From Hemiscyllium ocellatum (lineage: Eukaryota): a stretch of DNA of 64,000 nucleotides. The notes beneath the pieces were generated by a model, which saw only the letters and a list, made by a program, of their open reading frames with translations, searched no databases and had not been told where the DNA came from. The DNA lies in contig NC_083412.1 in assembly GCF_020745735.1 (NCBI RefSeq), forward strand, positions 14,192,235 to 14,256,234, read 5' to 3'. This document shows positions 1 to 59,800 of this stretch, piece after piece. How positions within the stretch are numbered: the first letter of the stretch is position 1; every line of letters begins with the position of its first letter. The position numbers and the translations under genes were made by a program.

Positions 1-457
1 TCAGAGGAGGTTTACCAGGATGCTGCCTGGACTGGAGGGCTTGTCTTATGAAGAGAGTTTGACTGAGCTCGGGCTTTTTTCATTGGAGAAAAGGAGGAGG
101 AGAGGGGACCGAATTGAGGGAAACAAGATAATAAGAAGCACAGGAAGATTCGATAGCCAGAGACAATTTACCAGGGCAGAAAAGACAAACACGAGGGGCT
201 ATAGTTTTTAGCTGGTTGGAGGAAAGTATAGAGGTGATGTCAGAAGCAGGTTCTTCACACAGCGTTGTGAGAGCATGGGATGCGTTGCCAGCAACAGTTG
301 TGGAAGCAAGGTCATTGGGGACATTTAAGGGACTACTGGACATGCATATGGTCACAGAAATTTGAGGGTGCATACATGTGGATCAGTGGTCGGCACAATA
401 TCGTGGGCTGAATGGCATTTTCTGTGCTGTACAATTCTATGTTCTATGGTCTATGCT
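1..457 (+). mobile_element. CR1-clade LINE 3' end
   Basis: ORF2 C-terminus ([24 protein letters not shown]), 3'UTR and (TTCTATG)n tail. Confidence 0.9.
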
Positions 458-1344
458 CCGAATTTACACCCCTAATTACTTCACCTGAAACAAGTTTCCG
501 GCTCACCTTTCACCACCACCTCAAAACCCAGAGAGGTGCCGAGATTTGCAGTGAAAGGAGTATAATCTTACAATATCTTTAAGCAGAAGTAAAATATTTC
601 TGTTTGATTCAGACACAATATACTTTATTTGTACTTTCTCTAAGATAGCCCACGTTTTTTAAAAAACAATTGCTACGCAACTCGCTCTAGAAATTCGAAA
701 TAGCTCATTGTAAATTTGTCCAAATTCAATATTGCGTAGTCTCCATCAAATTTACTTCCTTGTTGGAGTGCACTGTAAACATTGAGACTGTGTGCATGAA
801 CTTTATCCTCTTCCAAGAATCCCTTTAAATTATCAGGTACCTATTACACTGAAGTGATTCAGAATATAGTCTCGCGTGAATCTAAGCATACCTTTTAGAA
901 TTAAGGCTCATTGGTTTCGAAATTTCTGACGTTCGGGCTCATTAGTTTCGAAAATCCTGGCACTCTCGAAAATTAATAATTTCACACTACTTCACCAGCA
1001 CTGAGATGCATTATTAATAAATGGCTTGATGTGTTGATGGTTGTTCATCCATCATTATGTTGCGACGTTGAATGGGACAAATGGGTTCCACTCTTCAGTG
1101 TCTCCATTTCCTGAAAACATAAACAAGTTCCATCCAGTCCACGTCAAACAGAATGGGTTTATTTGTATTAAGCTTATACTGATGCAGAAAAAAACAAATA
1201 GTTGGGATGAAAACGCCGGCATGTAATTACTTCATCCGTCTCTCTTCCTTCTTGAAGGAAGAGAATGCTCATCCCTTTGTTAAATAGGGATTTCCTAACC
1301 TTTTTGCACACCGACAATTGCATTTCCATAATTCCAATGTTCCT

Positions 1345-4300
1345 ACCATAGAACACAGAACATAGAAAAACACAGCACAGAACCGGCACTTCGGCCCTTG
1401 ATGTGAACTTATTAAAACCCATCACCCAACACTGTCCCACCATCATCCATGTGCTTATTCAATGATTGTTCAAATCTCCCTAATGTAGCTGAGTCAACTA
1501 ATTGACAGGCACGTCATTCCACGCCCTCACCACTCTCTGACATCTGTCGTAAATCTATCATCCCTCAATTTGTAGTTATGCCCTTCGGACACGCTGATGT
1601 CATAATCCTGGGACATAGATATTCATTGGTTATCCAATCTAATCCTCTGATCATCTTGTACATCGCTGTCAAGTCCGATGTTCGCCTTCTTCTTTCTAAA
1701 GAAAACAGACAGAAGCTTTTCAGCCTTTCCTATTAAGACCTTCTCTCCAGATCAGGAAACATCGTGTTAGATATCCTCTCTACAATTTCCAATGCTCCCA
1801 CATCCTTCCTGTATTGGGGAGACCAGAACTCTACACAAGTGTAGCCGCACTAGCATTTTGCATAGTTGCAGCATTACATTACAGCTCCAGAACGTAATCC
1901 ATCTACCAATAAAACGTATCACACTGTATACCTTCTTAAAAGCATTATAGACCTTGGGTTGCAACTTTCCGGGATGTATGTACATGGAATCCAAGATCCC
2001 TCTCACATTCACACCCCCAAGAATCTTTCCATTGACCCAGTGTTCTGCATTCCTGTAATTCTTCCCAAAGTGAATCACATCACATTTATGTGCATTGAAC
2101 TTCATTTGCCACCTGCCAGCCCAATTATGCAGTTGATTCAAGTCTCCCTGCAACCTGCAGCATTCTTCCACAAAGTCCATTACTCAACCGATTTTAGAAT
2201 CATCTGCAATCTCACTAACCCATCCACCCATGCCCCCGTCTAAGTCATGTATAAATTCACAAATAGCAGTGGTCCCAAAATAGATCTTTGTGGCACATCA
2301 CTTGTAACAAAACTCCAGGATGAACACATTCTATCAACCCCTCTCACTGCCTTTTTACAAAAAGCCAATTCCGAATCCAAATTGCTACATCACACGCCAT
2401 CTCATGCCTCGCATTTTCTGCAACAGCTTACCACGTTGAGCCTTATCGTAGGCTTTACTGAAGTCCTTATGCACTCCACATCAACTTTCCTACCCTCACG
2501 AACATGTTTGGTCACCTTCTCAAAAACCTCAATTTGTGAGAAATGACCTGCCCTTGACGAAACCATGTTGACTACATAAATCAAATTGTGGCTTGCGAGA
2601 TGCTTATAAGTCATATCTGTAATTACCATTTCCAAACCCTTTCCTACAACAGACGTAAGGCTTACTGGTCTGTCATTACCCGGGTCAGCTCGACTGCCGT
2701 TCTTGAACAAGCGCACAACATTTGCAAACCTCCTGACTTCTGGTACAGAACCTGTAGGTTAGATGACACAAAGATCAAAGCCAAAGACTCTGTCATCTCC
2801 TCGCGAGTTTCGCAGAGAATCATCAGATAAATCCCTTCGAGAACAGGGGACTTATCTACATTCAGTCCTTCCAGAATGGATACATCACTTCCTTACTAAG
2901 ATATATTTGTTTCGCACCTCTCCGACCTCCACAGGGTCCATACACAGCTTCCCAATTGTGCTTTGACCGGCCCTATTCCTACCCTGGTCATCCTTTGGTC
3001 CCTCACAGGCCTAGAGAAAGATGTAGAGTTCTCCTTTATTCTACCTGCTAAAGACCGCTTATGTCATCTCTTTCCTCTTCTCAATTCTCTCTTTCAGTCC
3101 TTCTTAGTTAATCTGTAATTCTCCAATGCCACAAATGAACGATCTCGTTTCATCACCACAAAAGCGTCCATATTCCGCTGAACACGAGATGCAATTTGTG
3201 CAGTAAAACACGGTTGCTTTACCTTATCTCTTCATTCCTGCCTGACAGAGACATACATATCATGGACACCCACCGTCATTTCCTTAAAGCAGCTTTACAT
3301 TTCGATTGTCCCCATCCCCTACATTTTGCTTCCCCTTTTCTATGCATCCTAGGTCTTGTCAAACCATCCAAACCATCTGCTCTAAGAAAGTTCCAGTCGA
3401 TATTTGGAAAATTGAAATCACCCATAACAACTACCCTGCTACATCTGCATTTTTCCACAATCTGATTTACAATACTATATCCTCTTTTTCCATCTTCCCT
3501 GTTCTTTCTCAACGTTCTAAACCCTGGAACAACAAGCACACATTCGTGTCCCTGTGAAAGCTACGTCTGCGTTATTGCCATAACACCATAGCCCCAGGTA
3601 CTGATCCATGCTCTCAGTTCGTCACTGTTATTTCTGACACTCCTTGCGTTAAAACAGACACACTTTAACTGAGCCCTTTGTTTCATCGCGTGGGAAAAAG
3701 AAGTCCCAAAACATTCATTACATCCTGTCCATGCTCCATCGCAACTGTTGCCTCTCAGATATGTAGCTCTGATTCCCACCCCCCGCCAAACTAGTTGAAA
3801 TGCTCCCGAACCAAATTACCAAATCTCCCTCCCAGGACATTCGTGTCCCTCCAGTTTAGGTGGAAACCTTAATTCATGAACAGATTTCATTTTAGCCCGA
3901 GGGTATCCCGATGATATAAGTATCAGAAGTCCTCTCTCCTGCACCAGCCTCGCAGCCACGTTTAAAACTGCATTCCCTGGCTGTTTGTCACCTCTCCATG
4001 CAGTGGCTAAAATAGCAAACCCGTGATCACGATTGTACTCGACCTGCATTTCAACTTTCAGTCTAGGTCTCTGTAGTCACATTTCAGATCTTCAATCCCG
4101 TTCCTAGCTATGGCATTGTAGACAATACGTTCCCTGATTTCTGGCTGCTCACTCTCCCACTTCAGAATCTTATCAACCCGATAGGCGACATCTCAGACCC
4201 TGGAACCAAAAGGAAAATTACCTTCCAGGAGTCCCGCTCCTGACCAAAATAACTACTGTCAATCAGTCGAAATGTTGGGTCTGCTACCACTACCGCTTTT

Positions 4301-4485
4301 CTATTCTTCCCCCTTCCCATCTGAGCCACACTGCCAGGCTCAGTTCCAGAGACCTGACAACTATGGCTTTCTGCTGATAGGCCGTACCGACCAGCAGTAA
4401 CCAAAGGGGAAGAGTTTTTGCTGAGAGGAACGGCCACAGGGGATCCCTGCTCTAACAATCCCTTCCATTTCTTCCCTTCCGGCAT
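1345..4485 (-). mobile_element. Decayed CR1 LINE (partial ORF1 esterase, APE endonuclease, RT, tail) with internal deletions
   Basis: Motifs RKAVVV, CFNARSVRN, VMGDFNFPNIDW, RPVSLTSVVGK, LQGDL..L..WA..WQMKFN..KC; (CATAGAA)-type tail near 1347-1370. Confidence 0.92.
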
Positions 4486-4489
4486 TTGT

Positions 4490-7400
4490 TCGATAGTCCC
4501 GATGTGGGATAAGGATTGTTGGACTAGAAGGCAGCGAGTTGTAAATGTTCGTGTCTTTTCTTTCTCGTGGTAAATTTGGTTGTTCCAAACAGTTCTTGTT
4601 GTAGTAATGCCTCTTTTGTTTATCAGAGCTTTCGGGGTGTGGAAGAAGTGCTTTCCGGTGTTTTATAAAAGGAAAACGAAGCAAAATTGTTGGAATTGCT
4701 CGTTAAGATGGTTTTAAAGTTACCTTCTTACCATCACCATAAGAAAGGGAGAGATAATTACAACAATAGCTCAACATTTATATTTGCTAGAAATGACATC
4801 GGAGTATTTGGAGATGGCTAAAATTCAATTGAAAGTGACACAGCTTGAGTTAAAGACAAAAGAAAAATTAAGAGGAAAATAAATGAAATGGGCTTGAATT
4901 ATGATTAGAAACACAGGTAAGAAAAAGATGAAAACCTAGTAGACAAAAACTGAAAGGTAGAATTACTTTAGCAGTACTAAAAGAAAATGAGAGATAAGAA
5001 AGAGACAAGGAGACAGAGCAGAGGTAGCAATTGGCGGATTGGTGTTTGAACATCACAAATTATCACTTGGCCATGAAAGCCAGCTTGAAAGGATTGAGAT
5101 GAATGCTGAATGTAAGCTTAGTGTGGAAGAGAGTCAAGGTGAGGAAACCCATGGTAGCCAAAGTCCTGGTGAGCATCTGTTCAAATATATTCGAGCATTG
5201 TCTAAGCTTTGCGAGAAGGATGTGGAAGCCTTTGTTGTCTTAGTTGAGAAGGTGGTTGAAGGGATGAATTGGCCAGTGACCATGTGGATTTTGTTGATTC
5301 AAACATAACTGATAAATAGAGGTAGAGAAGTATTTGCATCACTATCAGGCGAGGTATCCTGCATTGATGAGAAAGCGAATAAAGTCAATTTAATTGCATG
5401 TGAACTTGGACTAGAAGTCTACAGACAACGTTCCAGAAGTCTCCCGAGCGTCCCTGGTCACACCTGAACTCCGTTTGAAAAGACCAACCGAACTAATTTT
5501 GATTGATGGATAACGGCGTTAAAATGCAATATATCTATGATGTGTTAAGAAAGATGATTTTTTTTAAGAGTTCAAAAATTCACTTCCGAAGGCAGTGAGC
5601 AATCTCATGGAAGAGCAGAGCATTAAAACGTTAAGATTAGCGGCTAAAATGGTTGGTGTTTATGAGTTGGTTCAAAAATCGAAGTTTGGCTTCCAACATC
5701 AACTTCAGTGAATGAGGCACAGTAATGGGAGTAAAGCGAAATCCTCATGTGGTAAAGAATAAATTGAAGATCACTAGGATAATTTACCACAGGGCAAAAA
5801 GGAAACCCTTGATGCAGAAAGAGAAATTATAAAGCTCCAATATCTTCACTGCAATAAAGCAGGCCACGAGAAATCGCAGCGTCTGCTGTTTCGAAAAAAA
5901 AAACACGAGGACGACAGACGTAGAAAAACAGGATAAGTCAGTGAATTTTGGTGGAATGCAAACAGAAAGTACAATGGAGGCGAAAAATGTGCACCAGAAT
6001 GTACAATCTGGTCGTAGGTTGGTTCAGGCGGAAGTGGCAGATCTTCTTAAAACATATACCTGCGAAACTAAAGTTCACTTGCAGAGGCCAGGCGGAGCAG
6101 GTAAGGAGGTTACAATATAAACAAGCACAAGATCTTATCAAACTACGATTCTGAAAGTTGAGGACAGATGGACCTCTGAAGGCCCATTACGAGATAGAGT
6201 GCTCTTAACAGGATTTCCCGGTGAGACAAGAAGTATTCAAACATGTAGAGTGAGGTTTGGGAGTCCCATGAAAAAAGTGGAGTATTTATGGCAGGAGCGC
6301 TGGATTTTTGCTGAACTCCAGGAGTGTAATTTGTCCTTGCTATTGATGTATCTGGTGCACAGGTAGGAGTTCTACATACTGTGGTTGAAAGGTGAGGGCA
6401 AATAAGAAAATTCAAGGGGAATCCTCAGAGACTCTGTTTAACATGAGCATATTGATGACAAAGTAAACATTTTTATCTCACAGCAACTAACTGAGTTGCA
6501 GCAGGAAAATCATTCAACAAAACAATTCATCATAAATCATACACAGGGAGATATTGCGAATCTATTTTAGTGTGATTATGTTAAATATATGCCTTTTGAG
6601 GAAATGTAGACCATCATATATTCTGGCAGATGAGAAATGGGCAGAAGTTCATCAAATCGCATTGCCAGTGACTTTCCGAGGAGATATTGGGGTAGTACAT
6701 GAACTGCCAGGAGGCGTACATTTCGAGTTAAGAAACTCAAACTAAAATGCAAAATCATTTTTTTTTTTGTCTGGACTGCACAAGGATGTAATTGAAAATT
6801 GCTAGATAAGACATACATGTTAGCTCATTCGAAAAATAGAGACAGTGATAAAACCCGCATTTTTAATAACTATTCCTGCTTTTGAGAAAGCTTTTCCAAG
6901 TGCCTCAATTTATTGCAGATGACCCGTACTTAAACAAAAAGTGCAATTCCATATTTGATAACAATAATGAATGCCCACGAGATTTCCATATTCCATTCCA
7001 TACGCAATGTCATAGCTAAAAGGATTGTGGAGGATTTACTCAAACGTTTCACGAGCTCTGGGATACCAAGTGAGATTTAGTCAGATTAATTGTCAAACTT
7101 TGCATCAGAATTAGTCAAAGACGTTATGGAAAGGTTAGAACGGAGTAATGCAAATCTGTTACATGCCAACCAGAATTGCAGAGAACTCTCGAATGTTGGC
7201 ATCAAACATGAATGAACACGCTGAAGGCATACTGTCAAGTCAGTCCAGATAATTGTGAAAAAGAAATACTGTTTGTACGTTTCTCCATCAGAGATGCACC
7301 AAATGAATCATCCATTTGCATTATTGTTCGGCCATAAAGTGACAGGAACGCGAAAATTCATCAAGGAGAAAGTTTTAAGTCTTAATTCGTAGACCATATA

Positions 7401-9813
7401 TTTGGATTAAGTGTCGATATTTCTGGAACGACAAAGAAGATCAGAGGAGTTGGCTAGAAAGAATTAAAATGTGTCACAGCATGCAATGAACCAGGAAGCA
7501 GACAATAAATAAAAAAAAACTCGCCGTTTTACTCTTGGAGATAAGGTATTAATTTTACTTCCAGTGACAGGTACACCATGAAAAGCAGTTTTTAGTGGAC
7601 CTTATCAAGTCAAAAGGAGAAGGGAGAACCAAGATCAGAGGATTCTGAAATAGACATTTCACAGATTAAATTGGACAACGTGGATATTGTTAAAAATTGG
7701 TATAAACCTTTCAGAGTAAAATCAAAATTACCTGAAAGAGTGTTTTGCTATCAAATAGGGAGATAAATGGAAATAAGCTGGAAAATACTAACTAATTATA
7801 CATGATTTAGAAATAGGAAATACTGTTCTGATAATGCAACATCTGTATCAGCGTAAACCTCCAATCGGCACAATTTAAAAAGGACATTGAATGCATGCTC
7901 CAAGTGAACATAAGAGAATTGAGTTAGACACTGGAGCTCATCCATCGTCATGATTCCAAAACCAGATGGAACCTTATGGTTATTTGTTGTCTATCACAAA
8001 TTTAATGGACTTGGAAAGTCTTATCCGTATCCAATTCCCCTTGTGGAAGGCTGTGTTTAACGAGGGGCAAGCAACCTATGTTTATAAGTTGGACATGCTC
8101 AGAGGGCACTGGGAGATAACATTGTCGGAAGGATTGAAGCCCATTTTGGTTCTCGTTACGCCGAATGAATTACACCAATTTTAATTCATGCCATTTGTCA
8201 CTGAAAATGCGCCAGTCACATTTCAAACACAAACCAACAAGATCATTGCCGGATTAACCAGCTGTGAAATTTGTTTCGATGACCTGGTGACTTTTATTAA
8301 CACATGAAGGAACATTTGTAACATTTATCAGAATTATTCAATCGACAATGGGAGACAGACATGCTGATAAATCTGGCTAAAGGTGCATTTTCCAAAGCCA
8401 AAGTCACATCCTGTGCCATGCTACTAAACATTGACAAAATACTTCCTGGGCTGCAAAAAAAAATGTATTTTCGTAGTTTCCCATATCATCGACGAAACGA
8501 AGAGTACCACAGTTCCTGGGATTGAATGGATTTATTCAGAAGGTCGTTCCAATTTTTAGTTGCATGTCTCCTGTACTCAGTGGGTTGCTGAAGCAAGGCA
8601 CTAAGATTCAGTGGACAGCGGACTGCCAGAACACAATTGAGATCCTGAAAGCTCTGACACCGCTGCCTCAGCATTAGCCACACCTAAATACGCAAAGCCT
8701 TTCCAGATGTCTATCTATCCAATTGATTTGGATGTCGATGCTGTGTTCATTATGGAAGGTAGGAGCACGTAATACATTTATTGGGTATTTCGTCGGGATA
8801 TTGAACATTCAACAGCAGAAGATTTCGACAATGGAAAGGCGACTTTGAGTTGACGGTTGGCATTACAGCATTTCAACGTTCACGTTACCACTAATGGATC
8901 TGAGACAATCATATACACTGATCCTAACACATTTAACGATTGTAGAGAGAATTAAGAGCTTGGTTTTGCAGTCACTCCATTTGAAAATCGTGCACGTGGC
9001 AGGATGAGAAAAGATGAGAACTAACATATTGTGAAGTCTTGGTCGACAAATGGAAGTGGCTGCTAGTAGCAGTAAGGAGCTTGAAGTAGAATGTAATATC
9101 GCGTGTTTACATGGTTACAGTCAATGTAACGTGTCTGTATTGTCGTGAACCAACAATCGAAAATTAAATGGTTTTATAATGAAGGCATCTTTGGATATTG
9201 ATGTTTACGTTCTGTTTTCAGTGGTGAAACGTTAAGTTGTTGCTCATTTAATACGATTAAGCTAATTTTGGTTACTTTTCAAGAAGGGTCATAAAGTCAG
9301 ATGTGCTGTAATGTCTGAACTGCCATTTAATAATGTTGAGTCGAAGCTTCCTAAGTCAAACATGCAAAAAAGGCATTCAGTCTTTTTAAGACACGTGTGC
9401 AATGAAAGGGGAGTGGTTAAATCTCCAAGTTCAGGCTGTTTTCTTGTTTTGGGTTAACTTTACCTGGTCCCAAAAGAAACATCTCAATGCTGATCCTCTC
9501 TGTTTCTGACTTGTCGCTTCTGTGGAATCCTGCGTTTGAATTTACCATTTTCACAAGGGGTGTGGTTGGGTGATGTTGCAGGAAATAGGAACAGTTCTTC
9601 GTTATGTTACGTTTTAGTATCAATTGTGTTCTAAAATAGTTCTGTTCTTTTTTCGTCTGTGAGTAAATAAATTCCGTTTTGATTAAACCCGAGTGGCTTG
9701 ACCAGCTGCTTCGCTCCTGGAATATTCACCTGACATCTGTTGAAAACAACTGGAAAGTTAGGTTCAGGGCTCCCTTCCTGCAATACTTTGTGTGGTCTGG
9801 CCAGGACAATTAC
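4490..9813 (+). mobile_element. Decayed Gypsy LTR retrotransposon, Gmr1-like (gag-PR-INT-RT-RH order); 5' LTR absent
   Basis: Gag-like KDVEAF..EKV...WP..W (~5220), CCHC knuckle remnant (~5845), integrase HELPGGVH (~6700) and core (~7050), then RT LDMLRGHW / MPF..NAP.TFQ (~8090-8230), then RNase H remnant (~8700-8950). Many stops and frameshifts. Confidence 0.88.
9222..9813 (+). repeat. Probable 3' LTR of the Gypsy element
   Basis: Follows RNase H. Begins TG, contains aaataaa (~9665) and ends ...ggccaggacaattaCA. No second copy in the window to confirm the limits. Confidence 0.55.
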
Positions 9814-10704
9814 ACTGTGTTAATAGTTAATAAGGCATTAGATCACCATCTCCCCAATCTTTAGCATTGACCAAAATCCAGAGTCAGTCCCAGATGCCAA
9901 TCAGTTTGTACAATGTTTACTTCTCCTAAAACAGGCAGGAAAATAATTTTGCTCATCTCTATGGATAATGCTGGATAAACAATGGAGTATGTTTGAACCA
10001 AACTGCGCTCTAAATATGAGATACTGATCTCTGTTTACAAGGAGAGTTCCCAGAAGACGAGCACAGGTGCAGACACTTTAATGACGCAGGACGCTTTGCT
10101 GAAGACAAGATAGAGTGTCTATTTTGCAAACCAGAACATTGCAATGGCAATTGTATGGACTCAGGTTTTATTTGAGTGGAAGTTTTGGTGTACCGAATTG
10201 GACGGGTCGCTAGAGTCCATGCCAAATAGCCAAATTCATCTGATTGTGTTGGATATCCAACGTTTGATGTAGTGATTGGATTTTCAGCATACCACATGGT
10301 GGTATGTTGAAAATCACCATTGTTCAGATTGTCGGGATTTTAAAATGCCCTGTCACTTTTTTGTTCATATCATGGAAGCCATCTATTGCAGGACAGTGTA
10401 GAGTGCTTCGGTGAGCTGTACTGTACATTATCTACTGTGGATGCACAATTCTAGACGTAATCTCAACTATGAAGGCTCCAAAAGCAGTGCAAGAATTTTG
10501 CAAACCATGTTCAAATTAAGTTCCTTCTATTCATGTTTTCAATGATTGCGGGTGTCTTATTGTGCATGTTATGATTTTATGGGAATATCCAGCTAATCAG
10601 ACTAATCAATAAAGCAGAAGAAATCAAATACCACCTCCGCCAATAAATCATAGAATACACGACCATATCGTTCTCTATGCCTTTTCTAAGTGACAAGGAA
10701 TCAT

Positions 10705-11310
10705 TCCAGAATGTAAATTTGTTCGCTGAGTTGATAGCTTTGTTCTCAGACGTTTCGTCGCAGCATGCCAGTTAATATCAAAAGTGAGCCTCTGTTGAAG
10801 CACTGGTGCTCTATCCCGTTTACTATTTACGTTTCTTGGTCTGTTGCGGTGGGTGATATCAATTCCAGTTCATTGTCAGAGTGTTTGGGAAATGGGGCCC
10901 AATCGATTTGTTTCTTAATGGAGTTATTGTTTGAATGCCACTCCTCTAGGAATTGCCGTGAATGTCGAGGTTAGCCTGAACCAGAATGTATACACTGTCT
11001 CTGTCGAAATGGTGACCCTTTTCGTCTCTGTATCAGAATACCATAAGAATTTTGGTATCTAGTTGATCCTCGTGATTCCATGTGGTTAGTCAACTGCCAC
11101 TAGGTTCAATGTAGTATTTGTTGCAGTCCCTGCAGTGCATTTCATACATAAGCAAAAAGCGGAACAAAACACTGGTACTTCATCAGAGGCTCACTGCCGC
11201 TGTTACTAAGCACATTGATAAAACCTCTGCGAAAATATTGCCCAACTCAATGAGGAAACGTAGAAAGTGCACCACAAGTTGACCTACAAATCTCCAGAGA
11301 AATCACAATT
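10705..11310 (-). mobile_element. Penelope-like element remnant (GIY-YIG fragment flanked by oppositely oriented terminal sequence)
   Basis: Minus strand YEMHCRDCNKYYI (GIY-YIG-associated). cagaggctcact..gacgaaacgtctga terminus on - (~10745-10800) and a degenerate copy on + (~11180-11235). Mirror copy at ~47830-48425. Confidence 0.75.
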
Positions 11311-11463
11311 ATTTCAGGAGTACCGACTCATTGAAATTCACGTGATGTGGAACAACAATTACCTTGTGCAAAAATCTCTTTCAGACTGAGCTCAGGCGCG
11401 GACAAATATTTATCAGTAACTTGAACTTCCGTTGTTTTTTCCCCCTTTCTCTCTCTTTTACAG

Positions 11464-12350
11464 TTAGTCTGCTGGTGATTGCATTGCTGGCTTGGGGCAA
11501 CTGTGGTCTTTCTAAATGCACCACTCGCTATCTGGTGGCCATGGGAACGTCTGATCTTCTCTTCATTGTTTGTGATTTCGTAATTTTCCGATTTCGTTTC
11601 TTTTATTATCCAAAGTGTTTCCTGGACATCACCCCTGTTTGTAGTTTCGTCCATGTCCTGAGACGTTTGACCATTGACTGTTCTGTCTGGTTCACTGCTG
11701 CTTTTACTTTTGATCGATTGGTCGCCATTTGTTTTCATCAGATGAAAATTAAGTATTGCACAGAGAAAACTGCAATGAGGCTTCTAGCAACGATCTGCAT
11801 TTTCTTTTCTTTAAAGAACATTCCTTTCTACTTTCGATTTAAACCTGGAATTATCAGTAACAATATTTCATGGTACTGTTATACCAAGTCCAGTTATTTT
11901 AAAGACCGTCGGTGGGCAAGCTTTAAACATTTTGCACAATTTCTGACACCATTACTCCCATTCACTTTCGTTCTTTTTCTCAACGTTCTGACAGTGAGAC
12001 GTATCTTTGAGGCTGTTGAGGTTCGTAAGGGACTGCGGGGGCAGACCAAGACAAAGAGTGACTCGGAGATCGAGAGCCGACGGAATTCCATGGCTTTACT
12101 CTTTGCCATATCCACCAGCTTCATACTTCTCTGGTTGGTGTATATTCTATATACATTTCAAGCCGGTTATTCCTTACATTCTGCTGCTTTTTATCTCTTT
12201 GAACAAGTCGCATATATGCTGCGGAACCTCAGTTGCTGCACAAATGCACTTATTTATGTGGTGACACAGAAAAAGTTCAGAGCTCAGTTAAAGTATGTCG
12301 TGAAATATCCTGGCAGCAAACTAATTGAATGGATGAATAAATCCAACTGA
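11464..12350 (+). CDS. Terminal coding exon (~295 aa, mid-TM1 to stop) of a GPR139/GPR142-like class A orphan GPCR; first exon not securely located
   Basis: Pyrimidine tract + ttacag acceptor at 11463. Open frame with hydrophobic TM segments, CGLSKCTTRYLVAM..SDLL, FLDITPVC, FTFDRLVAIC (DRY-like), KYCTEKTA, TPLLPF, FILLW, LSCCTNALIY, TGA at 12348-12350. The track's GTG start at 11364 is probably intronic. Confidence 0.9.
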
Positions 12351-13739
12351 GAGCCAACATTGCGAACAATAGACAATAGAATGAGAAGGTCACGTACAGA
12401 ATGCACCAAAATGAAAATGAGGAGTATCAACGTGATAACATTCCTTTTCTAACTGGCGACGAATGATTCCATTTGAGTAGCAAAACGAAAGAGATTGACG
12501 GAACAAAGTCTGTGCAAAATATTGTGAGCAGTGAGCAACACTTTGTAGATTACTGAACAACAAATGCATAACTACAAGAGGTACTAGGTGTGCCAAACTA
12601 TCAATTTTTCCCAAGCAATCCGTTCTCAGTGAGTAAATCAGATCCAAAAATAAATGACCTCGAGGAAAGTAACATTGAACACAGCACGCCAGACTGGGAA
12701 ACTCAATGACAGTCTCCTGTCTACTCTTCCGCACTGAACTCACTGATCCACACATCTAGACAGAAATTTGAAAAACAAGACATTGACTAAATAAATTAAA
12801 AACATGTTTTAACAAACAGTCTGTCTTTTGATTTGAAATCCTTTTTGTGCAATACTTTGATCAGTTTGTTCCTATTTAGTTCCCCCGGCCTAACGGTACC
12901 ACTCGTTTTATATATACGATTCTTTTCACAAAACAGCTGCTGTGTTGATGAGGGAATCCGAGGTCTAATCAAAGAGCTCACTAACGGACGGTCCCCGAAG
13001 GCTGGCATGGAGTTGGATGTGACAGATGAGCCAAAATCCTCAGTTTTTCCACAAAAAATATTTTGTGTCTCTCACTAACTCCATCAAGCACAGCAGGAAC
13101 TGACTCTGAATGAATCCTGTTTGCTTGTAACTTAATATTTCAACTTGAGATCAATTCAAACATATACTACATTATTACCAACAATTACTGTTTCTATCTG
13201 CAACACAGCTCCTAAACGCATCCATGCCTGAGCTTATAATTGGTGAGATAGTCATTCATTCCACTGTTACTTCTGGAGCCGGGTATTCAAGTGCCACATC
13301 GGCCTGACGCCAGATGAAAAACTCTATATATTTACATTGGTTAAGTTCCTTCCACCCTCCTGATTTGTTTTCCCAGCAAATTCAATTTCTTGATCATCCA
13401 ATAACCGTCATGACATTCGACATATAAATCTCCAAATTTTCGTTTTTAATTTGTTACTCACGGATTTAAATATTTCATGTTGTACACTGATGTCATTCCT
13501 TTTTCGGCTGACATAAATCTTGTTTTATAAATGCTCTGCGATAGTGTTTCATCTTGTATTATGCTATAAATGTTATTAGCTGCTGGAGATGTTAGCTGCT
13601 GTGACGGTTAAAAAATAACATATTGCATTGAAATACATCAAATGAAATGGCAGATAATATTGCCAGAATAAAAGGCAAGACTAAGAATCGGGAACAATTC
13701 AGGAACCAGTAAAGGAAGACCCAAAACCTGCTTAGGGGA

Positions 13740-14720
13740 AGAGCAGAATATGAATGCAGCCTTCTCTCCAAGCCAAGATCCTTCTAACACTCACAGCCCA
13801 ATTCGCATCTCATTTGTTAACTCCCCAACAGCAGTCCAAATCTTGCATGAGACAATGTTCATTCCAGCCATGTCAAGATGTATATTGCCCATCGTGTTGA
13901 GGTCCAACCTGCTCCAGAGCTGCTCTCATTGCCCCTTAACAATGCTGCCTGACTCCCAAGTCCGAATTCTAGCCACATTTCGATTATTCAATGCTTGTTT
14001 CGATCATCACGAGTCACTCAGTGTGAGATCACGGTGCTACAGTTTCTGCCTTTCAACCTTGCTGCGAGCTGTCTCAAACTTCCACTTATTATAACATCCC
14101 CACCATCCTATCGTATTCATTGCAACCAACATGGAGCAATACCTCTGCTGTTTGATCCTGCTCCAGCAGAATTTCTTGCACCTGTTCTGTGATATCCTTG
14201 ACCCTTGCAGCAGAGCGGTTATCAGAGCACGCTGAAGGCATGTTTATAAATGTAGATCTGAAGCATGTTCCTCTGACGAAAGAACACAATCCCAATACTG
14301 CATGCCCACTCTTCTCCCTCTATTTCTGTTCAGATAAGGCGTTTCCTGCTGTCACTGATATGCCTGTGTCTGCATTCCCCCGATGAATCCTCTCCATCAC
14401 AAGTGCCTAAAGTGGTGTGGGATTTGGATACTCTCAGTAGACTTTTGGATTTTCAAGCATTCCCAATTTGCACGCACACCCCGAAACTATGGTGGGACCA
14501 CCTACACAGATGTGTTATTTCCCTAATCCTCCTATCCTGCATGGGGCACCGCCACTCTTGTTCCAGGAAGTAGAGAAAAGTTTATGCAAAGTATGACATT
14601 TCCTGGAGATATGTTGCTCTCTTGGACATCGAGCGTCCCAGAATCCCACATTTCGCTGGGTGACCACTTCTTATCAGTGGAAATGTCTGAGCATAATCAG
14701 AAGTTTCTGACCAGTTATAA
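13740..14720 (-). mobile_element. CR1 ORF1 fragment (zinc-finger and esterase region)
   Basis: Esterase-like ARVKDITEQVQEILLEQ...VLLHVGCNE and N-terminal MWD..C motif. Mirror copy at ~44420-45400 (+). Confidence 0.7.
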
Positions 14721-15079
14721 CGTGTTGAACTCGTTACCATTTCGTCTCAAAAAAATTTCCTTCCGCTGCATCATGTTAGTAACCACGTATTGAGTATTCC
14801 CCACCCAATGAAAAAAAATTGAAAAGTATCCCTCTTTCAACCAATCTCCCATTCATCAAATGTATTCTCTGCAAGGTCACCACTTTAAGATCTGTCAATT
14901 TCTTCTTCTTCCAGTACTACAGTTGCTTTGATAACACAGCACAGAGCTCATTTTGTATCATAAAGATACACTCCTTGCCATTTGGAAAGTTCAGAGTAAG
15001 CGCCAACCTTGGGAATAATTGGTACTTCAAACAGGAAGAGTCTCACACTTTATCCAATCATGTGTTGTAACCTTTCTGG

Positions 15080-15283
15080 AATAAAAAGTGAGGTCTGCAG
15101 ATGCTGGAGATCAGAGCTGAAAATGTGTTGCTGGTTAAAGCACAGCAGGTTAGGCAGCATCCAAGGAACAGGAAATTCGACGTTTCATCAGGAATGATGC
15201 AGGGCTCTGGCCCGAAACGTCGAATTTCCTGTTCCTTGGATGCTGCCCAATCTGCTGTGCTTTAACCAGTAACACATTTTCAG
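15080..15283. mobile_element. Short non-autonomous hairpin element made of two inverted Penelope-type termini, 11-bp TSD
   Basis: 70-bp inverted arms 15117-15186 / 15214-15283; direct repeat aacctttctgg at 15069-15079 and 15284-15294; absent from the paralogous site at ~44040-44060. Confidence 0.88.
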
Positions 15284-15989
15284 AACCTTTCTGGGAATGC
15301 CTGAGACCAATGGTGCAGGTAGAGTTTGACTCTGTAACCTAACATCACATTGCTGTACTGCTGAATGTTTCGAGATCTTGCTTTGTACCTGATGGCTATT
15401 TTACTTGGACGGAGCATGTAAAAAAAAGAGCCTTCAGGAACAGTGAATTTTATCCTACACGAAAGATTGCGTGAAAATATACCAATGATGTATTCTTTCT
15501 CTACAATACTGAACATTAATTGCAATGTTCCAGACAATTGCTGGCGTGTAGCATGTATTTTTGTTCACATTTTCCGTCTCTCTGTGATACAGTTATCTGG
15601 TCGTCACATGAGACTGTTTCAGGTGCACAGCATAATTTCCTATTCAAGCCTGTTAGAAAGAATAGGGAAGGAAACTCTGACATTTTATTGTCATAACCAT
15701 CAAACTGTTTTCTGCATACTCCGTTCATATCAGTTGTTCACGTGATATATGTCCACATTACTTGGGTGATTATGAAACATCAAATTAAAATAAAAACTTT
15801 TCAATTCTCTGTTCGTGAGAAAACTTCAGACATTTCAATATGACACGATCTGGTAAAAAGAGTGATTTATAACTGTGTACGTTCTTTGCGAATCTGCAGG
15901 ATCTCCATCTTTTGAACTGAACGCTTACAATTAAATGTACAGTTAAAGCTGCTACGTAGCAAGCAGTACAAAGAATTTGTGGCACCGTC

Positions 15990-17180
15990 ATGGAATCACA
16001 GAATGATAGAGCATGGAACCTGACCATTTGATCCAACAGGTCCGTGCTGAACAGAACCCCAAAGTAAAGTAGTACGACCTGCCTGCTCCAGTCTCGTGTT
16101 CCTTTATATATTACCTATTCATGTATGTATCGTGATGTGTTTTAAATGTTGTAACTGTACCCGCATCCACCACTTCCTCACGACTTTTATTCTACACACA
16201 AACGATGCTCTGTGCAAAACGTTTACTTGTCATGCTTTCTTTAAATACATGTCTTCTCACCTTCAAACTGTACCTGCTAGTCTTGAAACTTCCCATCCTT
16301 CAGTCCAATTTGCATATACCAACCAGATAACTCAAACTATTCGAGTTCCTTTTGCCATCAATCTGCCAGAATTCCTCTGAACCGTTCCTATTCATGGAGC
16401 TCTCCAGATGACTTTGAAATGTTGTTATTGCAGCAGTCTCCATCACTTCTTCTGGAAACTCATCCCATACATGCACCAAAATCTGCATGAAAACTTTGCA
16501 CCTTACATCCCTTTAAAATCCTTCCCTCTAATCCTACACTTCTGCCCTCCAGTTTTGGACTCCACCATCCCAGGAAAAAGACCTTGCCTATTTGCTGTAT
16601 CCAAGCCCCTCATGATTTTTAAAACTTTTTCTGTTCAACCCTTAACTTCTGACGCTCTAGGTGTAAACAGCCCCAGTCTTTTCAGCCTCTCCCCACAGAT
16701 CAAAACTTCCAGCTCTGGCAACATTCTTGGAAATATTTTCTCAAACCTATCAAGTTTAATAATATCCTTCCTGTATGAGGCAGACCAGAAATATGCACAA
16801 TATTCCAAAAATAGAGTGGCCAAATCAATGTCATTTTCAACTGCAACATGAGCTCCTAACCCCTTTCCTCAATGTACTGAACAATAAAGGAAAGCATACC
16901 AAATGCCTTATTCATTATTCTATCTACCTTCGACTCTGCTTTCAAGAAAATATCAACCTGCTTTCCAACGTCCCTTTGCTCAGCGATAATCCACTTACCA
17001 TGAAGTGCATAAGTCCTGCCTCACATTTACCTGAATTAAATATCATCTGCCACTCTTCAGTCCATTGGCCCACTTGTTGAAGGTGCCATTGCACTGCGAG
17101 TTAATCTTATTCGCTGTCCACTGCACCTTCAATATTGGTGGTATCTGCAAACTTACGAACTGCGCCACCTATGTTTGCAT
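15990..17180 (-). mobile_element. Two adjacent/nested CR1 3' fragments
   Basis: LEYCAYFWS..YRKDIIKLDR..K.F.RMLPELE..ERLKRLGLF and two 3'UTR-type segments. Mirror copy at ~42110-43350 (+). Confidence 0.8.
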
Positions 17181-18879: not shown

Positions 18880-19140
18880 ATACTTAGAACTTCTTTTGAA
18901 AACATGGAGATGTGTATGGATGTAGGAAGTTCGTTTGATGCAGTTTCTATCCATCAAATATATCTATTGAGCAAGGCTTTTGACAAGGTCTTGCATGGGA
19001 GACTGATTAAGAAAGTGAAAACACATGGGTATTAGTTAATATTGTCAAGGTGGATCAGAAACTGGCTGTGTAACAGGACATAAAGAGTTGTGACAGAAGG
19101 CTGTTTGACTGGGAACCCGTGCTCAGTTGTGTTTGTCCAG
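18880..19140 (+). mobile_element. Old CR1 RT fragment
   Basis: SKAFDKVLHGRLIKKVKTHG...WIRNWL.NR reading at ~18970-19080. Confidence 0.75.
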
Positions 19141-38580: not shown

Positions 38581-38599
38581 CTATGAGGAGGTGCCGCTA

Positions 38600-39290: not shown

Positions 39291-40044
39291 TATTTAATAA
39301 CATAAAGTCCAACTTGCTTGAATGATCAATTCAAACGCTTTACCTCTGACATTTCAAAATCAACACAACATGTTGCATCCCGTTCTTTACCATCAAAATT
39401 CACTCTGTTTGCAACCAATGCATTTCGCAGCAGTCTGTTCCATTGACAAGAATCAGTACAATAACTCATCAAGGTTCCAGAGACCGCTCGTTCTAAACCT
39501 GCTAACATTTTCATCGGTGAATGACGAGACATCAGAGACATGAAACCACGTGTAAAATTCCCTCCACACCACGAAGACTTGGAACGAGATTTAGTTAAAT
39601 TGCATAAGCTTGCAATTGGTGAGAGTGAGCAGTCCTCATGTGGAATCTGTTTTGTTGCGAGGTACACAAGGAATATATAAGCCACCTGAAGGGCCAGCCT
39701 TTTCCAAACGGTCACTTGATTTCCTCATTCTACTCAGCCCTTAACCTGTTCCCTGTTCTCATGTGAAGTTGTTGCTCGAGTTTAGGAACCATTTCTTCCA
39801 GGACTAAAACGATTTTTCAAAGGATTCGATGAAAATGTCTGTGTCCATTTCCATTGTTTTTGAACGCATTGAATTTTCATCACTTGTTCAAATATTGATA
39901 TTTTGCATCTTCTAAAATGATAATGTTCTGTAATAAAAAAGAATTGAAGGGATGTTCAAAGCGTTACTTTACGTGTTAAAATTCCTTCATGTTAATGCAT
40001 CTACTATTAGCTGTTTTGAAACATTTCCCACATGTTGCAATTAA

Positions 40045-46782: not shown

Positions 46783-47669
46783 TCAGTTGGATTTATTCAT
46801 CCATTGAATTAGTTTGCTGCCGGGATATTTCACTACATACTTTAACTGGGCTGTGAACTTTTTCTGTGTCACCACATAAATAAATGCATTTGTGCAGCTA
46901 CTAAGGTTCCGCAGCATAAATGCGACTTGTTCAAAGAGATCAAAAGCAGTAGAATGTAAGGAATAACCAGCTTGAAATACATATAGAATATACACCAACC
47001 AGACAAGTATGAAACTGGCGGATATGGCAAAGAGTAAAGCCATGGAATTCCATCGGCTCTCTACCTCCGAGTCATTCTCTGTCTTTCTCTGTCCCCATAG
47101 TCCCTTACGAACCTCACCAGCCTCAAGGATACGTCTCACCGTCAGAATGTTGAGAAAAAGAACGAAAATGAATGGGAGAATTGGTGTAAGAAATTGTGCA
47201 AAATATTTAAAGCTTGCCCACCGACGGTCTTTAAAATAACTGGACTTGGTATAACAGTGCCATGGAATATTGTTGCTGATAATTCCAGGTTTAAATCGAA
47301 AGTAGAAAGGAATGTTCTTTCAAGAAAAGAAAATGCAGATCGTTGCTAGAAGCCTCATTGCAGTTTTCTCTGTGCAATACTTAATTTTCATCTGATGAAA
47401 ACAAATGGCGACCATTCGATCAAAAGTAAAAGCAGCAGTGAACCAGACAGAACAGTCAATGGTCAAACGGCTCAGGACATGAACTAAACTACAAACAGGG
47501 GTGATGTCCAGGAAACACCTTGGATAATAATATGTGCGAAATTGGAAAAGTACTATGTCACAAACAATGAAGAGACGATCAGACGTTGCCATGGCCACCA
47601 GATAGCGAGTGGTGCATTTAGAAAGACGACAGTCGCCCCAAGCCAGCAATGCAATCACCAACAGACTAA
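46783..47669 (-). pseudogene. Inverted paralog of the GPR139/142-like exon with one premature stop
   Basis: Same 887-nt length, acceptor and terminal stop as 11464-12350. TTA>TGA at 47322-47320 (in TM4, IFFS*KN); otherwise in frame. Confidence 0.88.
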
Positions 47670-55990: not shown

Positions 55991-56879
55991 CGATGATAAG
56001 AACATTGGAATGCTGGAAATGCAATTATCGGTGTGCAAAAAGTGAGGAAATCCCAACTTAACAAAGGAATGAGCATTCCCTTCCTTCAAGAAGGAAGAGA
56101 GACGGATGAAGTAGTTACATGCCGGCGTTTTCATCCCATCGCTTTGGTTTTCTGCATCCATATAAGCTTAATGCAAATAAACCCATTCTGCTTGACGTGG
56201 AGTGGATGGAACTTGTTTGTGTTTTCAGGAAATGGAGACACTGAAGAGTGGAACCCATTTGCGGACATTCAATGTCGCAACATAATGATGGATGAACAAC
56301 CATCAACACAACAAGCCATTTATTAATAACGCATCTCAGTGCTGGCGAAGTAGTATGAAATTATTAATTTTCGTGAGTGCCAGGAATTTCGAAATTAGTG
56401 AGCCTGAACGTCAGTAGTTTTGAAACCAATGAGCGTTAGTCATAAAAAAGTATGCTTAGATTGACGTGAGACGTTATTCTGAAACACTTAAGTGTAATTG
56501 GTACCTGATAATTTAAAGTGATTCTTGGAAGACGATAAAGTTCATGCACACAGTCTCAATGTTTGCAGTGCATTCAAAAATAGAAGTAAATTTAATGGAG
56601 ACTACACAATATTGAATTTGGACAAATTTGCAATGAGATATTTTGCATTTCTAGAGCGAGTTGCGTAGCAATTTTCAAAAGAATTTGGGTCAACTTAGAG
56701 AAAGTACAAATAAAGTATATTGTGTCTGAATCAAACAGAAATACTTTACTTCTGCTAAAAGATATTGTAAGATTATGTTCCATCCACTGCAAATCTCGAC
56801 AGTTCTCGGGGTTTTGAGATGGTGGTAAAAGTTTAGCTGCAAAATTATTTCAGATGATGTAATTAGGGGTGTACATTAA

Positions 56880-59800
56880 TAGCATAGAACACAGAACATA
56901 GAACATAGAGCAATACAGCACAGAACAGGCCCTTCAGCCCACGATGTTGTGCCGACCTCTGATCCACATGTATACACCCTCAATTTTCTGTGACCATATG
57001 CAACTCCAGTAGTCCCTTAAATGTCCCCAATGACGTTGCTTCCATAACTGCTGCTGGCAACGCATTCCATACTCTCACACTTCAGTGTAAAGAACCCGCC
57101 TCTGACATCCCCTCTATACTTTCCTCCAACCAGCTAAAAACTATGACCCCTCGTGTTAGTCATTTGTGCCCTTGGAAATAGTCTCTGGCTATCGACTCTT
57201 CCTATGCCTCTCATTATCTTGTAAACCTCAATTAGTTCCCCTCTCCTCCTCCTTTTCTCCAATGAAAAACGTCCGATCTCCGTCAACCTCCCTTCATAAG
57301 ACAAGCCCTCCAGTCCATGCAGCATCCCTGTAAACCTCCTCTGAACCCTCTGCAAAGCATCGTATAATTGGGCGACCAGAACTGGACGCAGTATTCCATG
57401 TCCGGTCTACCCAAAGTTTTATAGAGCTACAGCAAGTTCTCAGGGACTCATAAACTCAATCTCCCTGTTCATGAAAGCCAAAAAACGATATGCTTTCTTA
57501 ACAACCCTGTCCATTTGGGTGTCCATTGTTAGGGATCTATGTACCTGCACATCAAGATCCCTCTGTTCCTCCACACTGCCAAGAATCCTATCCTTAATCC
57601 TATACTCAGCTTTCAAATTCGACCGTCCAAAATGCATCAGCTCGCATTTATCCGGGCTGAACTCCATCTGTCACCTCTCAACCCATCTTTGCATCCTGTA
57701 AATGTCCCGCTCTAGCCTACAACTACTGGATTAGTGGGAATTCATACTCTCAACAAACAGTATTTCAGTTCCATCTCAAACATCAAAAACTGTAAGTAAA
57801 ACAGTTTTATCTACCCACCTCCATAACCAGCGCTCCTCAAATAATCCAGAAGATTCCCCGGCCTTGGAAATGACTCAGACGCCATTATCCATGCAGCTAC
57901 CACCCCCACGCTGATTGGCGATGTCACTTCGCCCTCATCATGGCCCTTCCCACAAGCACTTCCGCCCCTCACAATTTCTCATGCATCACACATGACATCA
58001 CGTCCGCCTGTCACATCATCGCTGATGCCACACATTCAATGACTTCCGTCACCCCTTTGCCGTAGCCACCACCACTTCCACACCCCCAGCGCTACTCACC
58101 TGCATTCTGCTGACACGCACCCCACACACCCCACTTTCACTATCCCCACACCCCAGAACCCCGAGGGGAACACTACCCATGCTCGAACCCCATTCCCCCA
58201 CCATCACACCCACTCCAGTTACTGGCTCCGACACCACTCACAGCTCCACACCAACACCTGATCCCAGCTTCCAGCCCTGCCGAGTTTTCACCATCCCTCT
58301 TGACCTCCCCCTCACTGAGGATGAACGATCGGTCCTCAGCAAGGGACTCACCTTCATTCCCCCTCCGTCCACGCATCAATGAATTTAATTCACGCCATGA
58401 CGTCGAACACTTCTTCCGTCGCCTCCGCCTCTGAGCTTACATTCACAGTCAGGATTCCCGCCCACCTTCCGAGGACCCCTTTGCCAACCTCCAACACACT
58501 GCATCCACCTGGACACCCCGCGCTGGCCTTTACCTGCCCTCGCCCTCTTCATTTCCAACTGCCACTGGGACATTTACCACCTCAACCGGTCTACCTCCCT
58601 CCCCCACTCCAGCCCCTCACCCTCACAACGCGCATCTCTCCAATCCCTCTGCTCCAATTCCAACCTCACCATCAAGCCAGCGGATAAAGGGGGCGCAGTG
58701 GTAGTCTGGCGCACTGATCTCTACACTGCTGAAGCCAAACGCCAACTTGAGGACACATCTTCCTACTGCCCCCTCGACCATGACCTCACCACCGTCATTA
58801 AACCACCATCTCCCAAACCATACAGAACCTCCTCACCTCAGGAGATCTCCCACCCACAGCTTCCAACCTCATAGTCCGGGATCCCCGCGCTGCCCGGTTC
58901 TACCTCCTTCCCAAGATCCACAAGCCTGACCACCCTGGCCGAACCATTGTCTCGGAATGCTCCTGGCCCACTGAACTCCTCTTTACCTACCTTGACACTG
59001 TCCTATCCCTCATCGTCCAGGAACTCCCCACATACATTCGAGACACCACACACGCCCTCCACCTCCTCCAAGTCTTCCGTTTTCCGGCCTCCAACAGTTC
59101 ATCATCACCATGGATATCCAATCCCTCTACACCTCCATCCGCCATGACCAGGGCTTCCAAGCCCTCCGTTTGTTTCCCTCCAGACGTCCCCAGCAGTACC
59201 CTTCCATCTACATTCTCATTCGTTTGGCCTAACTGGTCATCAACCTTAACAATTTCTCATTTGAATGCTCCCACTTCCTCAAGACCAAAGGGGTAGCCAT
59301 GGACACACGTATGGGCCCCAGCTATGCCTGTCTCTTTGTTGGCTACATAGAACAGTTGACCTTCCGTAATTCCCACGCACACTCCCCACCTCTTCCTCCG
59401 CTAGTTTGACGACTGCATTGTCGCCACCTCATGCTTCCGCGAGGAGGTTGAGAAATTCATCAACTTCACCAACCCATTCCACCCTGACCTTAAATTTACC
59501 TGGACCATCTCTGACACCACCCTCCCCTTCCTGTACATCTATATCTCCATTAATGACGACTGACTTGACACTGACAGTTTTTACAAACACACCGACTCAC
59601 ACAGCTACCTGCATTACACCTTTTCCCATCCTACCTATTGCAAAAATGCCATCACGTATTCCCAATTCCCCCGCCTCCGACGTATCTGCTCCCAGGAGGA
59701 CCAGTTCCACCATATAATACACCAGATGGCCTCCTTCTTTAGAGACCGCAATTTACCTTCCCACGTGTTTAAAGATGCCCTCCAACGCATCTCGTGCACA

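What the first reader, a model, noticed from the sequence alone, without database searches (positions are those of the whole stretch)
1..57344. Old inverted duplication (arms at least 16-18 kb) holding a convergent pair of GPR139-like receptor genes
Seen: 1-17741 is the reverse complement of 41561-57344, including unique DNA and TE junctions, with about 5-10% mismatch in ~120-bp spot-checks and many independent indels. It is therefore a real, aged duplication rather than an assembly artefact. The left arm runs off the window. Inference: inverted duplication is one mechanism that expanded this orphan GPCR family in this lineage.
Basis: partly seen in the sequence, partly recalled or inferred. 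Interest (0 to 1): 0.72.

Follow-up and report, generated by a model that had tools for sequence, protein, structure and literature searches.

The report
Old mirrored duplication, shark receptor exon
A stretch of at least 17.7 kb of shark DNA, mostly old mobile-element debris plus the main exon of an orphan receptor gene, was copied in mirror image tens of millions of years ago; one of the two receptor copies is now dead, so this is an ordinary case of gene-family birth and death.

Summary
Window 1-17742 is the reverse complement of 41561-57344. Over 15,531 aligned bases the arms are 89.3% identical (K2P 0.115), evenly at 87-92% per kb, with 79 indels. A 23.8-kb spacer separates them, and there are no N gaps. 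A 214-bp element with a target-site duplication sits only in the left arm, so the copies have aged apart.

Each arm carries exon 2 of a shark-expanded class-A orphan GPCR (database label "GPR139-like"), and the two copies converge.
- The left exon 2 (11464-12350, +) is intact and has a splice acceptor.
- The right exon 2 (47669-46783, -) has a TTA>TGA nonsense codon at 47322-47320.
- No exon 1 was found anywhere in the window.

So "pair of genes" is overstated: at most one copy can work. For left versus right, dS is 0.10 and omega 0.62. The two arms changed at equal rates. The duplication dates to about 0.30 of the divergence from the zebra-shark orthologue.

Public contigs show further related copies in the best-holding species. 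Those I could measure are 81-84% like the left arm, farther than its partner. Whether a closer copy exists, and whether the arms are truly adjacent, could not be tested.

This is an ordinary inverted segmental duplication in a birth-and-death receptor cluster. The scan noted another mirrored duplication of this family elsewhere in this genome.

The parts
1..17742 (+). Left arm of the inverted duplication. It runs off the window at position 1.
   Evidence: collinear with the reverse complement of 41561-57344 at 89.3% identity
41561..57344 (-). Right arm of the inverted duplication.
17743..41560 (.). 23.8-kb spacer. The arms have no homology here except the small inner inverted pair.
   Evidence: sensitive blastn of 17000-29700 against 28000-42300 finds only the 25012-25883 / 33032-31867 pair and mobile-element copies
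11464..12350 (+). Left copy of GPCR exon 2: 294 codons plus stop, intact, preceded by a polypyrimidine tract and the acceptor ...ttttacag at 11462-11463. The intron is phase 1.
   Evidence: 7tm_1, E 2.8e-15; 70% identical to a zebra-shark protein; 1322 family hits
46783..47669 (-). Right copy of GPCR exon 2. The acceptor is kept, but TTA>TGA at 47322-47320 (codon 116 of the exon) makes it a pseudogene.
8643..10596 (+). A 1.9-kb segment present only in the left arm, inside LTR-retroelement-like pol remnants. It is most likely a deletion in the right arm.
   Evidence: record 16 (a contig of relative C lies on 10300-10954 without gaps, across the 10596/10597 junction)
15075..15288 (.). A 214-bp hairpin-like, very abundant mobile element inserted in the left arm after the duplication. 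Its target-site duplication is ACCTTTCTG(G).
   Evidence: filled versus empty site; a contig of relative B skips 15045-15291; depth in this bin is in the millions
40020..41560 (+). A 5'-truncated retroelement carrying reverse-transcriptase remnants. I read it as Penelope-like from motifs I recall. Its 3' terminus abuts the inner end of the right arm to within about 5 bp.
   Evidence: copies at 59185-60284 and 26131-28116; the shared terminus 41466-41554 matches 26220-26131; (weak RVT_1)
25012..25883 (+). Left member of the inner inverted pair: about 370 bp of a LINE 3' end plus about 490 bp that I read as non-LINE flank.
   Evidence: 861 aligned bases, 91.5% identity, K2P 0.090
31867..33032 (-). 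Right member of the inner inverted pair, interrupted by a SINE (32356-32664) that the left member lacks.
   Evidence: the SINE matches L001 16035-16313
21537..22485 (+). Third, much older GPCR exon-2 pseudogene in the spacer, with several stops and a frameshift. It is 32-39% identical to family members, on the same strand as the left copy, and has no mirror copy.

Best explanation
This is a genuine DNA-level inverted segmental duplication inside a cluster of a shark-expanded orphan class-A GPCR family. A block of at least 17.7 kb was copied in reverse orientation, 23.8 kb away. The block held old LINE and LTR-element debris plus exon 2 and the 3' flank of one receptor gene. Since then both copies have drifted at equal, essentially neutral rates to 11.5% divergence, without arm-wide gene conversion. 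They have picked up private indels and a private mobile-element insertion. The right receptor copy has been killed by a nonsense mutation. The left copy keeps an open exon 2 and its splice acceptor, but under relaxed constraint and with no first exon in view. Shown: the arms, their divergence, the private insertion, the nonsense codon and the sister relation of the arms relative to the zebra-shark gene. Inferred: the mechanism. I favour break repair or template switching, with one breakpoint at the 3' end of a retroelement, and I take the right arm to be the derived copy because the left copy lies head-to-tail with the neighbouring older pseudogene.
For: Arms: (15,531 bases, 89.3% identity, 79 indels, even identity; no 200-bp window is below 82.5%, and none reaches 95.5% outside exon 2). 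Age and sisterhood: (3' flank K2P is 0.115 left-right, 0.379 left-zebra shark and 0.388 right-zebra shark; 35 left-derived against 41 right-derived sites; 201 sites where left = right but differ from zebra shark). Coding: (exon 2 is 93.2% identical at nucleotide level; dS 0.100, dN 0.062, omega 0.62, against 0.36-0.38 versus zebra shark; 13 against 15 polarised amino-acid changes; TGA at 47322-47320). Private events: target-site duplication around 15075-15288; SINE only in the right inner copy. Independent data: of the 38 best-supported differing letters at positions aligned with the right arm, 29 are exactly the right arm's letter. Some contigs of the best-holding species differ from the left arm by about as many letters as the right arm does over the same interval; for example X5 record 31 has 50 differences against 51. 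The window has no N gap.
Against: Adjacency and orientation of the arms rest on the assembly alone, because the laid contigs were under 2 kb. In the best-holding species up to 10-11 distinct contigs lie on one place at 80% likeness or more, so the block has further copies, and one closer than the partner cannot be excluded. The best holders carry only 0.25-0.33 of the sampled words, so they may be patchy or a close relative. The nonsense codon was not among the sites shown by the reads. The left copy may also be dead, because exon 1 was not found.
Confidence: 0.8

Rival explanations
1. The arms are the outer remains of one much larger palindrome, with arms of at least 26 kb and a spacer of at most 6 kb. 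Its middle sections (17743-25011 and 33033-41560) were later overwritten by deletions and insertions. The 0.87-kb inner inverted pair is then a surviving island of the same event.
For: The inner pair has the same orientation and order as the arms, and its axis is offset by only about 1.3-1.5 kb. Its divergence (K2P 0.090, standard error about 0.01) lies within the range of the arms' 1-kb windows. By my reading it extends about 490 bp past the LINE 3' tail into sequence with no other copy in the window or in three other shark loci. At 25011/25012 the left copy joins two LINE pieces out of register, which looks like a deletion scar.
Against: No homology at all was found between the 7.3-kb and 8.5-kb middle sections. 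Meanwhile the 15.5 kb of aligned arms took only one small insertion and one 1.9-kb deletion, so wholesale replacement needs special pleading. The old GPCR pseudogene at 21537-22485 has no mirror copy. The inner pair is slightly less diverged than the arm mean (z about 2.4).
Confidence: 0.3
2. Left and right are not the direct products of one inverted duplication. They are two members of a multi-copy block family amplified in this lineage, brought into mirror orientation by separate steps such as a tandem or dispersed duplication followed by an inversion. Each may have a closer relative elsewhere.
For:: in the best-holding species 5-11 contigs lie on single places across the whole 6-kb stretch, against 1-4 in most listed rows (up to 12 in the coding exon) in the two relatives. 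A contig in two runs joins 12310 to 15523, which is a variant copy lacking 3.2 kb. Earlier scan notes report 30-32 kb block duplications of this family elsewhere in this genome.
Against: The extra copies that could be measured are 81-84% like the left arm, farther than the right arm (X1 records 2, 3, 5 and 6; X5 record 28). At 15005 and 15766 the left and right arms share a letter that nearly all other contigs lack. Left and right are equidistant from the zebra-shark orthologue and share 201 states against it.
Confidence: 0.2
3. Assembly artefact: a mis-join of two paralogous loci, or of haplotypes, within one contig.
For: The locus is repeat-rich and the family is multi-copy. No spanning read evidence could be obtained.
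Against: Divergence of 10.7% with 79 indels is far beyond haplotype differences. There are no N gaps. Letters of the right-arm type occur in independent runs. Private mobile-element insertions are present.
Confidence: 0.05

Closest known systems
Inverted segmental duplications and palindromes that carry gene-family members in vertebrate genomes, such as the ampliconic palindromes of mammalian sex chromosomes (from my own knowledge)
   Same: Two long mirror-image arms around a spacer, each carrying a copy of the same gene.
   Different: Those palindromes are kept above 99% identical by arm-to-arm gene conversion. Here the arms are 89.3% identical and evenly diverged. One copy is dead and the spacer is long (23.8 kb), so the arms show no sign of arm-wide gene conversion.
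Birth-and-death evolution of clustered chemoreceptor-type GPCR genes such as OR, TAAR and V1R clusters (from my own knowledge)
   Same: Local block duplication of a receptor gene with its mobile-element-rich flanks, relaxed constraint afterwards (omega 0.62) and rapid pseudogenisation of one copy. An older pseudogene sits next door.
   Different: This family has two exons with long introns, and only exon 2 is in view. Its function and expression are unknown. The duplication is inverted rather than tandem.
GPR139 proper (human orphan receptor; PDB 7VUG and others)
   Same: Class-A 7TM fold (Pfam 7tm_1). Databases label most relatives 'probable GPR139'.
   Different: GPR139 is not the best solved match. 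Galanin receptor 2 and GPR21 score better (E 4e-6 against 6.7e-5). The nearest named protein is labelled 'sex peptide receptor-like'. The label is loose.

Membership tests
Inverted segmental duplication | Two long collinear reverse-complement arms, far beyond chance | tested here: met
   15,531 aligned bases at 89.3% identity in four collinear blocks
Inverted segmental duplication | Homology covers non-repeat DNA and shared mobile-element junctions, not just two copies of one element | tested here: met
   exon 2 plus 0.9 kb of flank is also conserved with the zebra-shark locus; several different mobile-element fragments lie in the same order in both arms.
Inverted segmental duplication | The copies have aged independently, with private indels and insertions | tested here: met
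   79 indels; target-site duplication around the 214-bp element present only on the left; 35 against 41 derived sites
Inverted segmental duplication | The arms are each other's closest relatives in the genome | tested here: inconclusive
   further copies exist. Those measured are 81-84% like the left arm, but only the longest contigs are listed.
Inverted segmental duplication | Physical adjacency shown by spanning reads | not testable with these tools
   Only contigs under 2 kb were available and one 6-kb lay was allowed. There is no N in the window.
Conversion-maintained palindrome | Arms nearly identical (above 99%) through ongoing gene conversion | tested here: not met
   89.3% identity. 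The only low-divergence tract is about 190 bp inside exon 2.
Shark-expanded 'GPR139-like' orphan GPCR family | 7tm_1 domain and about 50% or more identity to many cartilaginous-fish members | tested here: met
   7tm_1, E 2.8e-15; 1322 hits; the top 120 are 47-70% identical, all from sharks
Shark-expanded 'GPR139-like' orphan GPCR family | Two-exon gene: a short exon 1 of about 22 codons spliced into TM1 | tested here: inconclusive
   The acceptor is present in both copies. The zebra-shark orthologue has exon 1 about 3.7 kb upstream. No exon 1 was found in the window.
GPR139 orthologue | GPR139 is the closest characterised receptor | tested here: not met
   galanin receptor 2 and GPR21 score better than GPR139, and all matches are weak
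Pair of functional genes | Both copies have an open reading frame | tested here: not met
   TGA at 47322-47320 in the right copy

The most novel reading that the evidence does not exclude
The whole of 1-57344 is the eroded remnant of one large fold-back palindrome, with arms of at least 26 kb, that formed at a retroelement-associated break. Mirror-image block duplication would then be a recurrent route by which this very large shark receptor family was amplified in this lineage. Supporting hints are a second mirrored duplication noted elsewhere in this genome, and several extra copies of this block in the best-holding species against one to a few in two relatives.
Probability: 0.2. Interest if true: 0.4.

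Novelty: new member of a known kind. Interest (0 to 1): 0.2.

Why it matters
This adds one dated, well-delimited example of how a huge, undescribed shark receptor family turns over. A block duplication carried the main coding exon, selection then relaxed, and one copy was lost. It also shows that the window holds at most one candidate gene, not a pair, which matters for anyone counting intact family members. In itself an 11%-diverged inverted segmental duplication in a gene cluster is ordinary.

Tried and rejected
- Exon 1: a motif scan, tblastn with three N-termini, sensitive blastn with the zebra-shark exon-1 region and an HMM of 55 family N-termini gave no credible hit. The look-alike at 10817-10849 / 48280-48312 has no ATG and sits next to stop codons.
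- RNA evidence: no RNA run holds the exon.
- Closer paralogues through short protein fragments: a 147-aa query found only two distant proteins.
- Hammerhead or other RNA families: none in the whole window at gathering score, and none at the arm boundary even at E up to 1. I therefore do not call the boundary element's terminus a ribozyme.
- tRNA scan: none found.
- Naming the boundary retroelement: Pfam gave only a weak RVT_1 hit and the Atlas search gave nothing usable.
- Neighbouring windows cannot be queried.
- Gene conversion across the arms: rejected, because identity is even. A possible tract of about 190 bp in exon 2 is only marginal, since the same stretch is also slow against zebra shark.
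- A map of mobile elements from three other shark loci is too thin to settle the make-up of the spacer.
- No paper in the held library describes this family in sharks.
Full report
**1. The observation**

A minus-strand blastn of the window against itself gives four collinear blocks that pair 1-17742 with 57344-41561 at 87-89% identity. A MAFFT alignment of the two arms has 15,531 aligned positions at 89.3% identity (825 transitions, 833 transversions, K2P 0.115) and 79 indels. Identity is even along the arms:
- Each 1-kb window is 87-92% identical.
- No 200-bp window is below 82.5%.
- The only 200-bp windows at 95.5% or more lie inside the receptor exon.

The left arm starts at the window edge, so 17.7 kb is a minimum.

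**2. What the arms contain**

Most of each arm is old mobile-element debris:
- LINE endonuclease and reverse-transcriptase fragments at about 1-3800. Pfam support is weak, but the sequence matches LINE copies in zebra-shark loci.
- LTR-retroelement-like pol remnants at about 7950-8700. This is my reading of motifs.
- Another repeat at 16295-16946.

The sequence that is clearly not a repeat is 11405-13277. It aligns at 74% to the zebra-shark (Stegostoma tigrinum) locus L001, as does its partner 47724-45867.

That region holds exon 2 of a class-A GPCR. The left copy (11464-12350, +) has 294 open codons, a polypyrimidine tract and an AG acceptor at 11462-11463. It matches Pfam 7tm_1 at E 2.8e-15. 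A database search gave 1322 relatives. The listed ones are all from sharks and mostly labelled "probable GPR139". The best is a 317-aa zebra-shark protein at 70% identity. The label is loose: among solved structures, galanin receptor 2 and GPR21 score better than GPR139, and all matches are weak.

**3. The "pair of genes"**

The right copy (47669-46783, -) keeps the acceptor but has TTA>TGA at 47322-47320, which is codon 116 of the exon.

In the zebra-shark orthologue a 22-codon exon 1 lies about 3.7 kb upstream. In this window I found no exon 1 on either strand. I tried a motif scan, tblastn, sensitive blastn and an HMM built from 55 family N-termini. The left reading frame has no usable ATG before TM1. 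Earlier notes of this scan report introns of up to 30 kb in this family (untested here), so exon 1 may lie outside the window. At most one of the two copies can be functional.

Left-versus-right figures:
- dS 0.100, matching the neutral K2P of the arms, and dN 0.062.
- Omega 0.62, against 0.36-0.38 versus zebra shark.
- Polarised amino-acid changes are balanced, 13 in the left copy and 15 in the right.

Constraint therefore relaxed on both copies.

**4. Age and sisterhood**

In the 3' flank, K2P is 0.115 between left and right, 0.379 between left and zebra shark, and 0.388 between right and zebra shark. There are 35 left-derived and 41 right-derived sites, and 201 sites where left and right agree against zebra shark.

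So the two arms are sisters relative to the zebra-shark gene and evolve at equal rates. The duplication dates to about 0.30 of the time since that orthologue split. Cartilaginous fishes have slow substitution rates (PMC8455134). At an assumed rate of about 1e-9 per site per year, 0.0575 per lineage is roughly 60 Myr. The rate is my own assumption. "Tens of millions of years" is a safe statement.

**5. Private events show independent ageing**

- The 214-bp element at 15075-15288 is flanked by the duplicated target ACCTTTCTG(G) in the left arm. The right arm has the empty site. A contig of relative B also skips 15045-15291.
- The 1.9-kb segment present only on the left (8643-10596) has no target-site duplication. 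A contig of relative C lies across its right junction without a gap (record 16). It is therefore most likely a deletion in the right arm, not an insertion in the left.

**6. Boundaries and spacer**

Homology ends at 17742 / 41561. On the right it ends within about 5 bp of the 3' terminus of a 5'-truncated retroelement carrying reverse-transcriptase remnants (40020-41560). The same terminus is shared with the copy at 26131-28116, and the body of the element also matches 59185-60284. No Rfam hammerhead was found there. Beyond the element, homology does not resume.

The spacer holds a third GPCR exon-2 pseudogene at 21537-22485, which is much older and has several stops and a frameshift. It is on the same strand as the left copy and has no mirror copy. 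This head-to-tail arrangement is my only reason, and a weak one, for taking the right arm as the derived copy.

**7. The inner inverted pair**

25012-25883 pairs with 33032-31867 over 861 aligned bases at 91.5% identity (K2P 0.090). The pair consists of about 370 bp of a LINE 3' end followed by about 490 bp that I read as non-LINE flank. The right member is split by a SINE that the left member lacks.

The orientation, order, near-common axis and similar age are compatible with one larger original palindrome. Against that, the 7.3-kb and 8.5-kb stretches between arms and inner pair share nothing, while the arms themselves took very few large changes. I give the "one giant palindrome" reading about 0.3.

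**8. Independent data**

The best-holding public runs (organism A, two studies) hold only 0.25-0.33 of the sampled words. Two relatives (organisms B and C) hold 0.06-0.07. No RNA run holds the exon.

I laid Logan contigs of four runs on 10300-16299 at 80% likeness:
- Of the 38 best-supported differing letters at positions aligned with the right arm, 29 are exactly the right arm's letter.
- Some organism-A contigs differ from the left arm by about as many letters as the right arm does. X5 record 31, for example, has 50 differences against 51.
- Up to 10-11 distinct organism-A contigs cover single places, against 1-4 in most listed rows (up to 12 in the coding exon) in B and C. Further copies of this block therefore exist.
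- The extra copies I could measure are 81-84% like the left arm, farther than the right arm.
- At 15005 and 15766 the left and right arms share a letter that nearly all other contigs lack.
- The tiling contigs of relatives B and C, of similar depth to one another, are about as far from the left arm as the right arm is. C has 418 differences against 441 over 4.3 kb; B has 238 against 247. The duplication is therefore about as old as, or older than, the split from those relatives.

None of this tests adjacency of the arms, and a closer copy elsewhere cannot be excluded.

**9. Verdict**

This is a real, old inverted segmental duplication in a birth-and-death cluster of a large shark-only receptor family. 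One duplicated exon is dead and the other is of uncertain status. The kind of event is well known. The held literature does not describe this family in sharks, but the scan has already noted the family many times, and a second mirrored duplication, on other DNA of this genome. Interest is low.

Noticed in passing
window 11664-11855: Within exon 2 the two arms differ at only 2 of 192 bases, with no synonymous change. The longest identical run is 93 bases and ends just before the nonsense site. The same stretch is also slow against zebra shark. So this is either strong constraint or a short gene-conversion tract older than the nonsense mutation (P about 0.04).
   Followed up: partly
window 15075-15288: A 214-bp hairpin-like element with the target-site duplication ACCTTTCTG(G). 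The family is extremely abundant in all four runs laid, with summed contig depth in the millions. Its ends resemble the terminus of the retroelement at 41466-41560.
   Followed up: partly
window 25012-25883 and 31867-33032: An inner inverted pair (91.5% identity) made of a LINE 3' end plus about 490 bp of flank. The right copy carries a SINE at 32356-32664. At 25011/25012 the left copy joins two LINE pieces out of register, which looks like a deletion scar.
   Followed up: partly
window 21537-22485: An old exon-2 pseudogene of the same GPCR family, with several stops and one frameshift. It is 32-39% identical to family members and on the same strand as the left copy.
   Followed up: yes
window 12310 and 15523: One contig in each of two runs of the best-holding species joins 12310 to 15523, skipping 3212 bases. 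Another copy of this block with a 3.2-kb deletion probably exists in that genome.
   Followed up: no
window 58026-60742, 40020-41560, 26131-28116: Three decayed copies of one retroelement family with reverse-transcriptase remnants. I read them as Penelope-like from a KIHK...PGR.IVS motif recalled from memory; Pfam gave only a weak RVT_1 hit.
   Followed up: partly
window 7950-10600: LTR-retroelement-like pol remnants lie directly upstream of the left exon 2, inside what would be the gene's intron. The right arm has lost 1.9 kb of them.
   Followed up: partly
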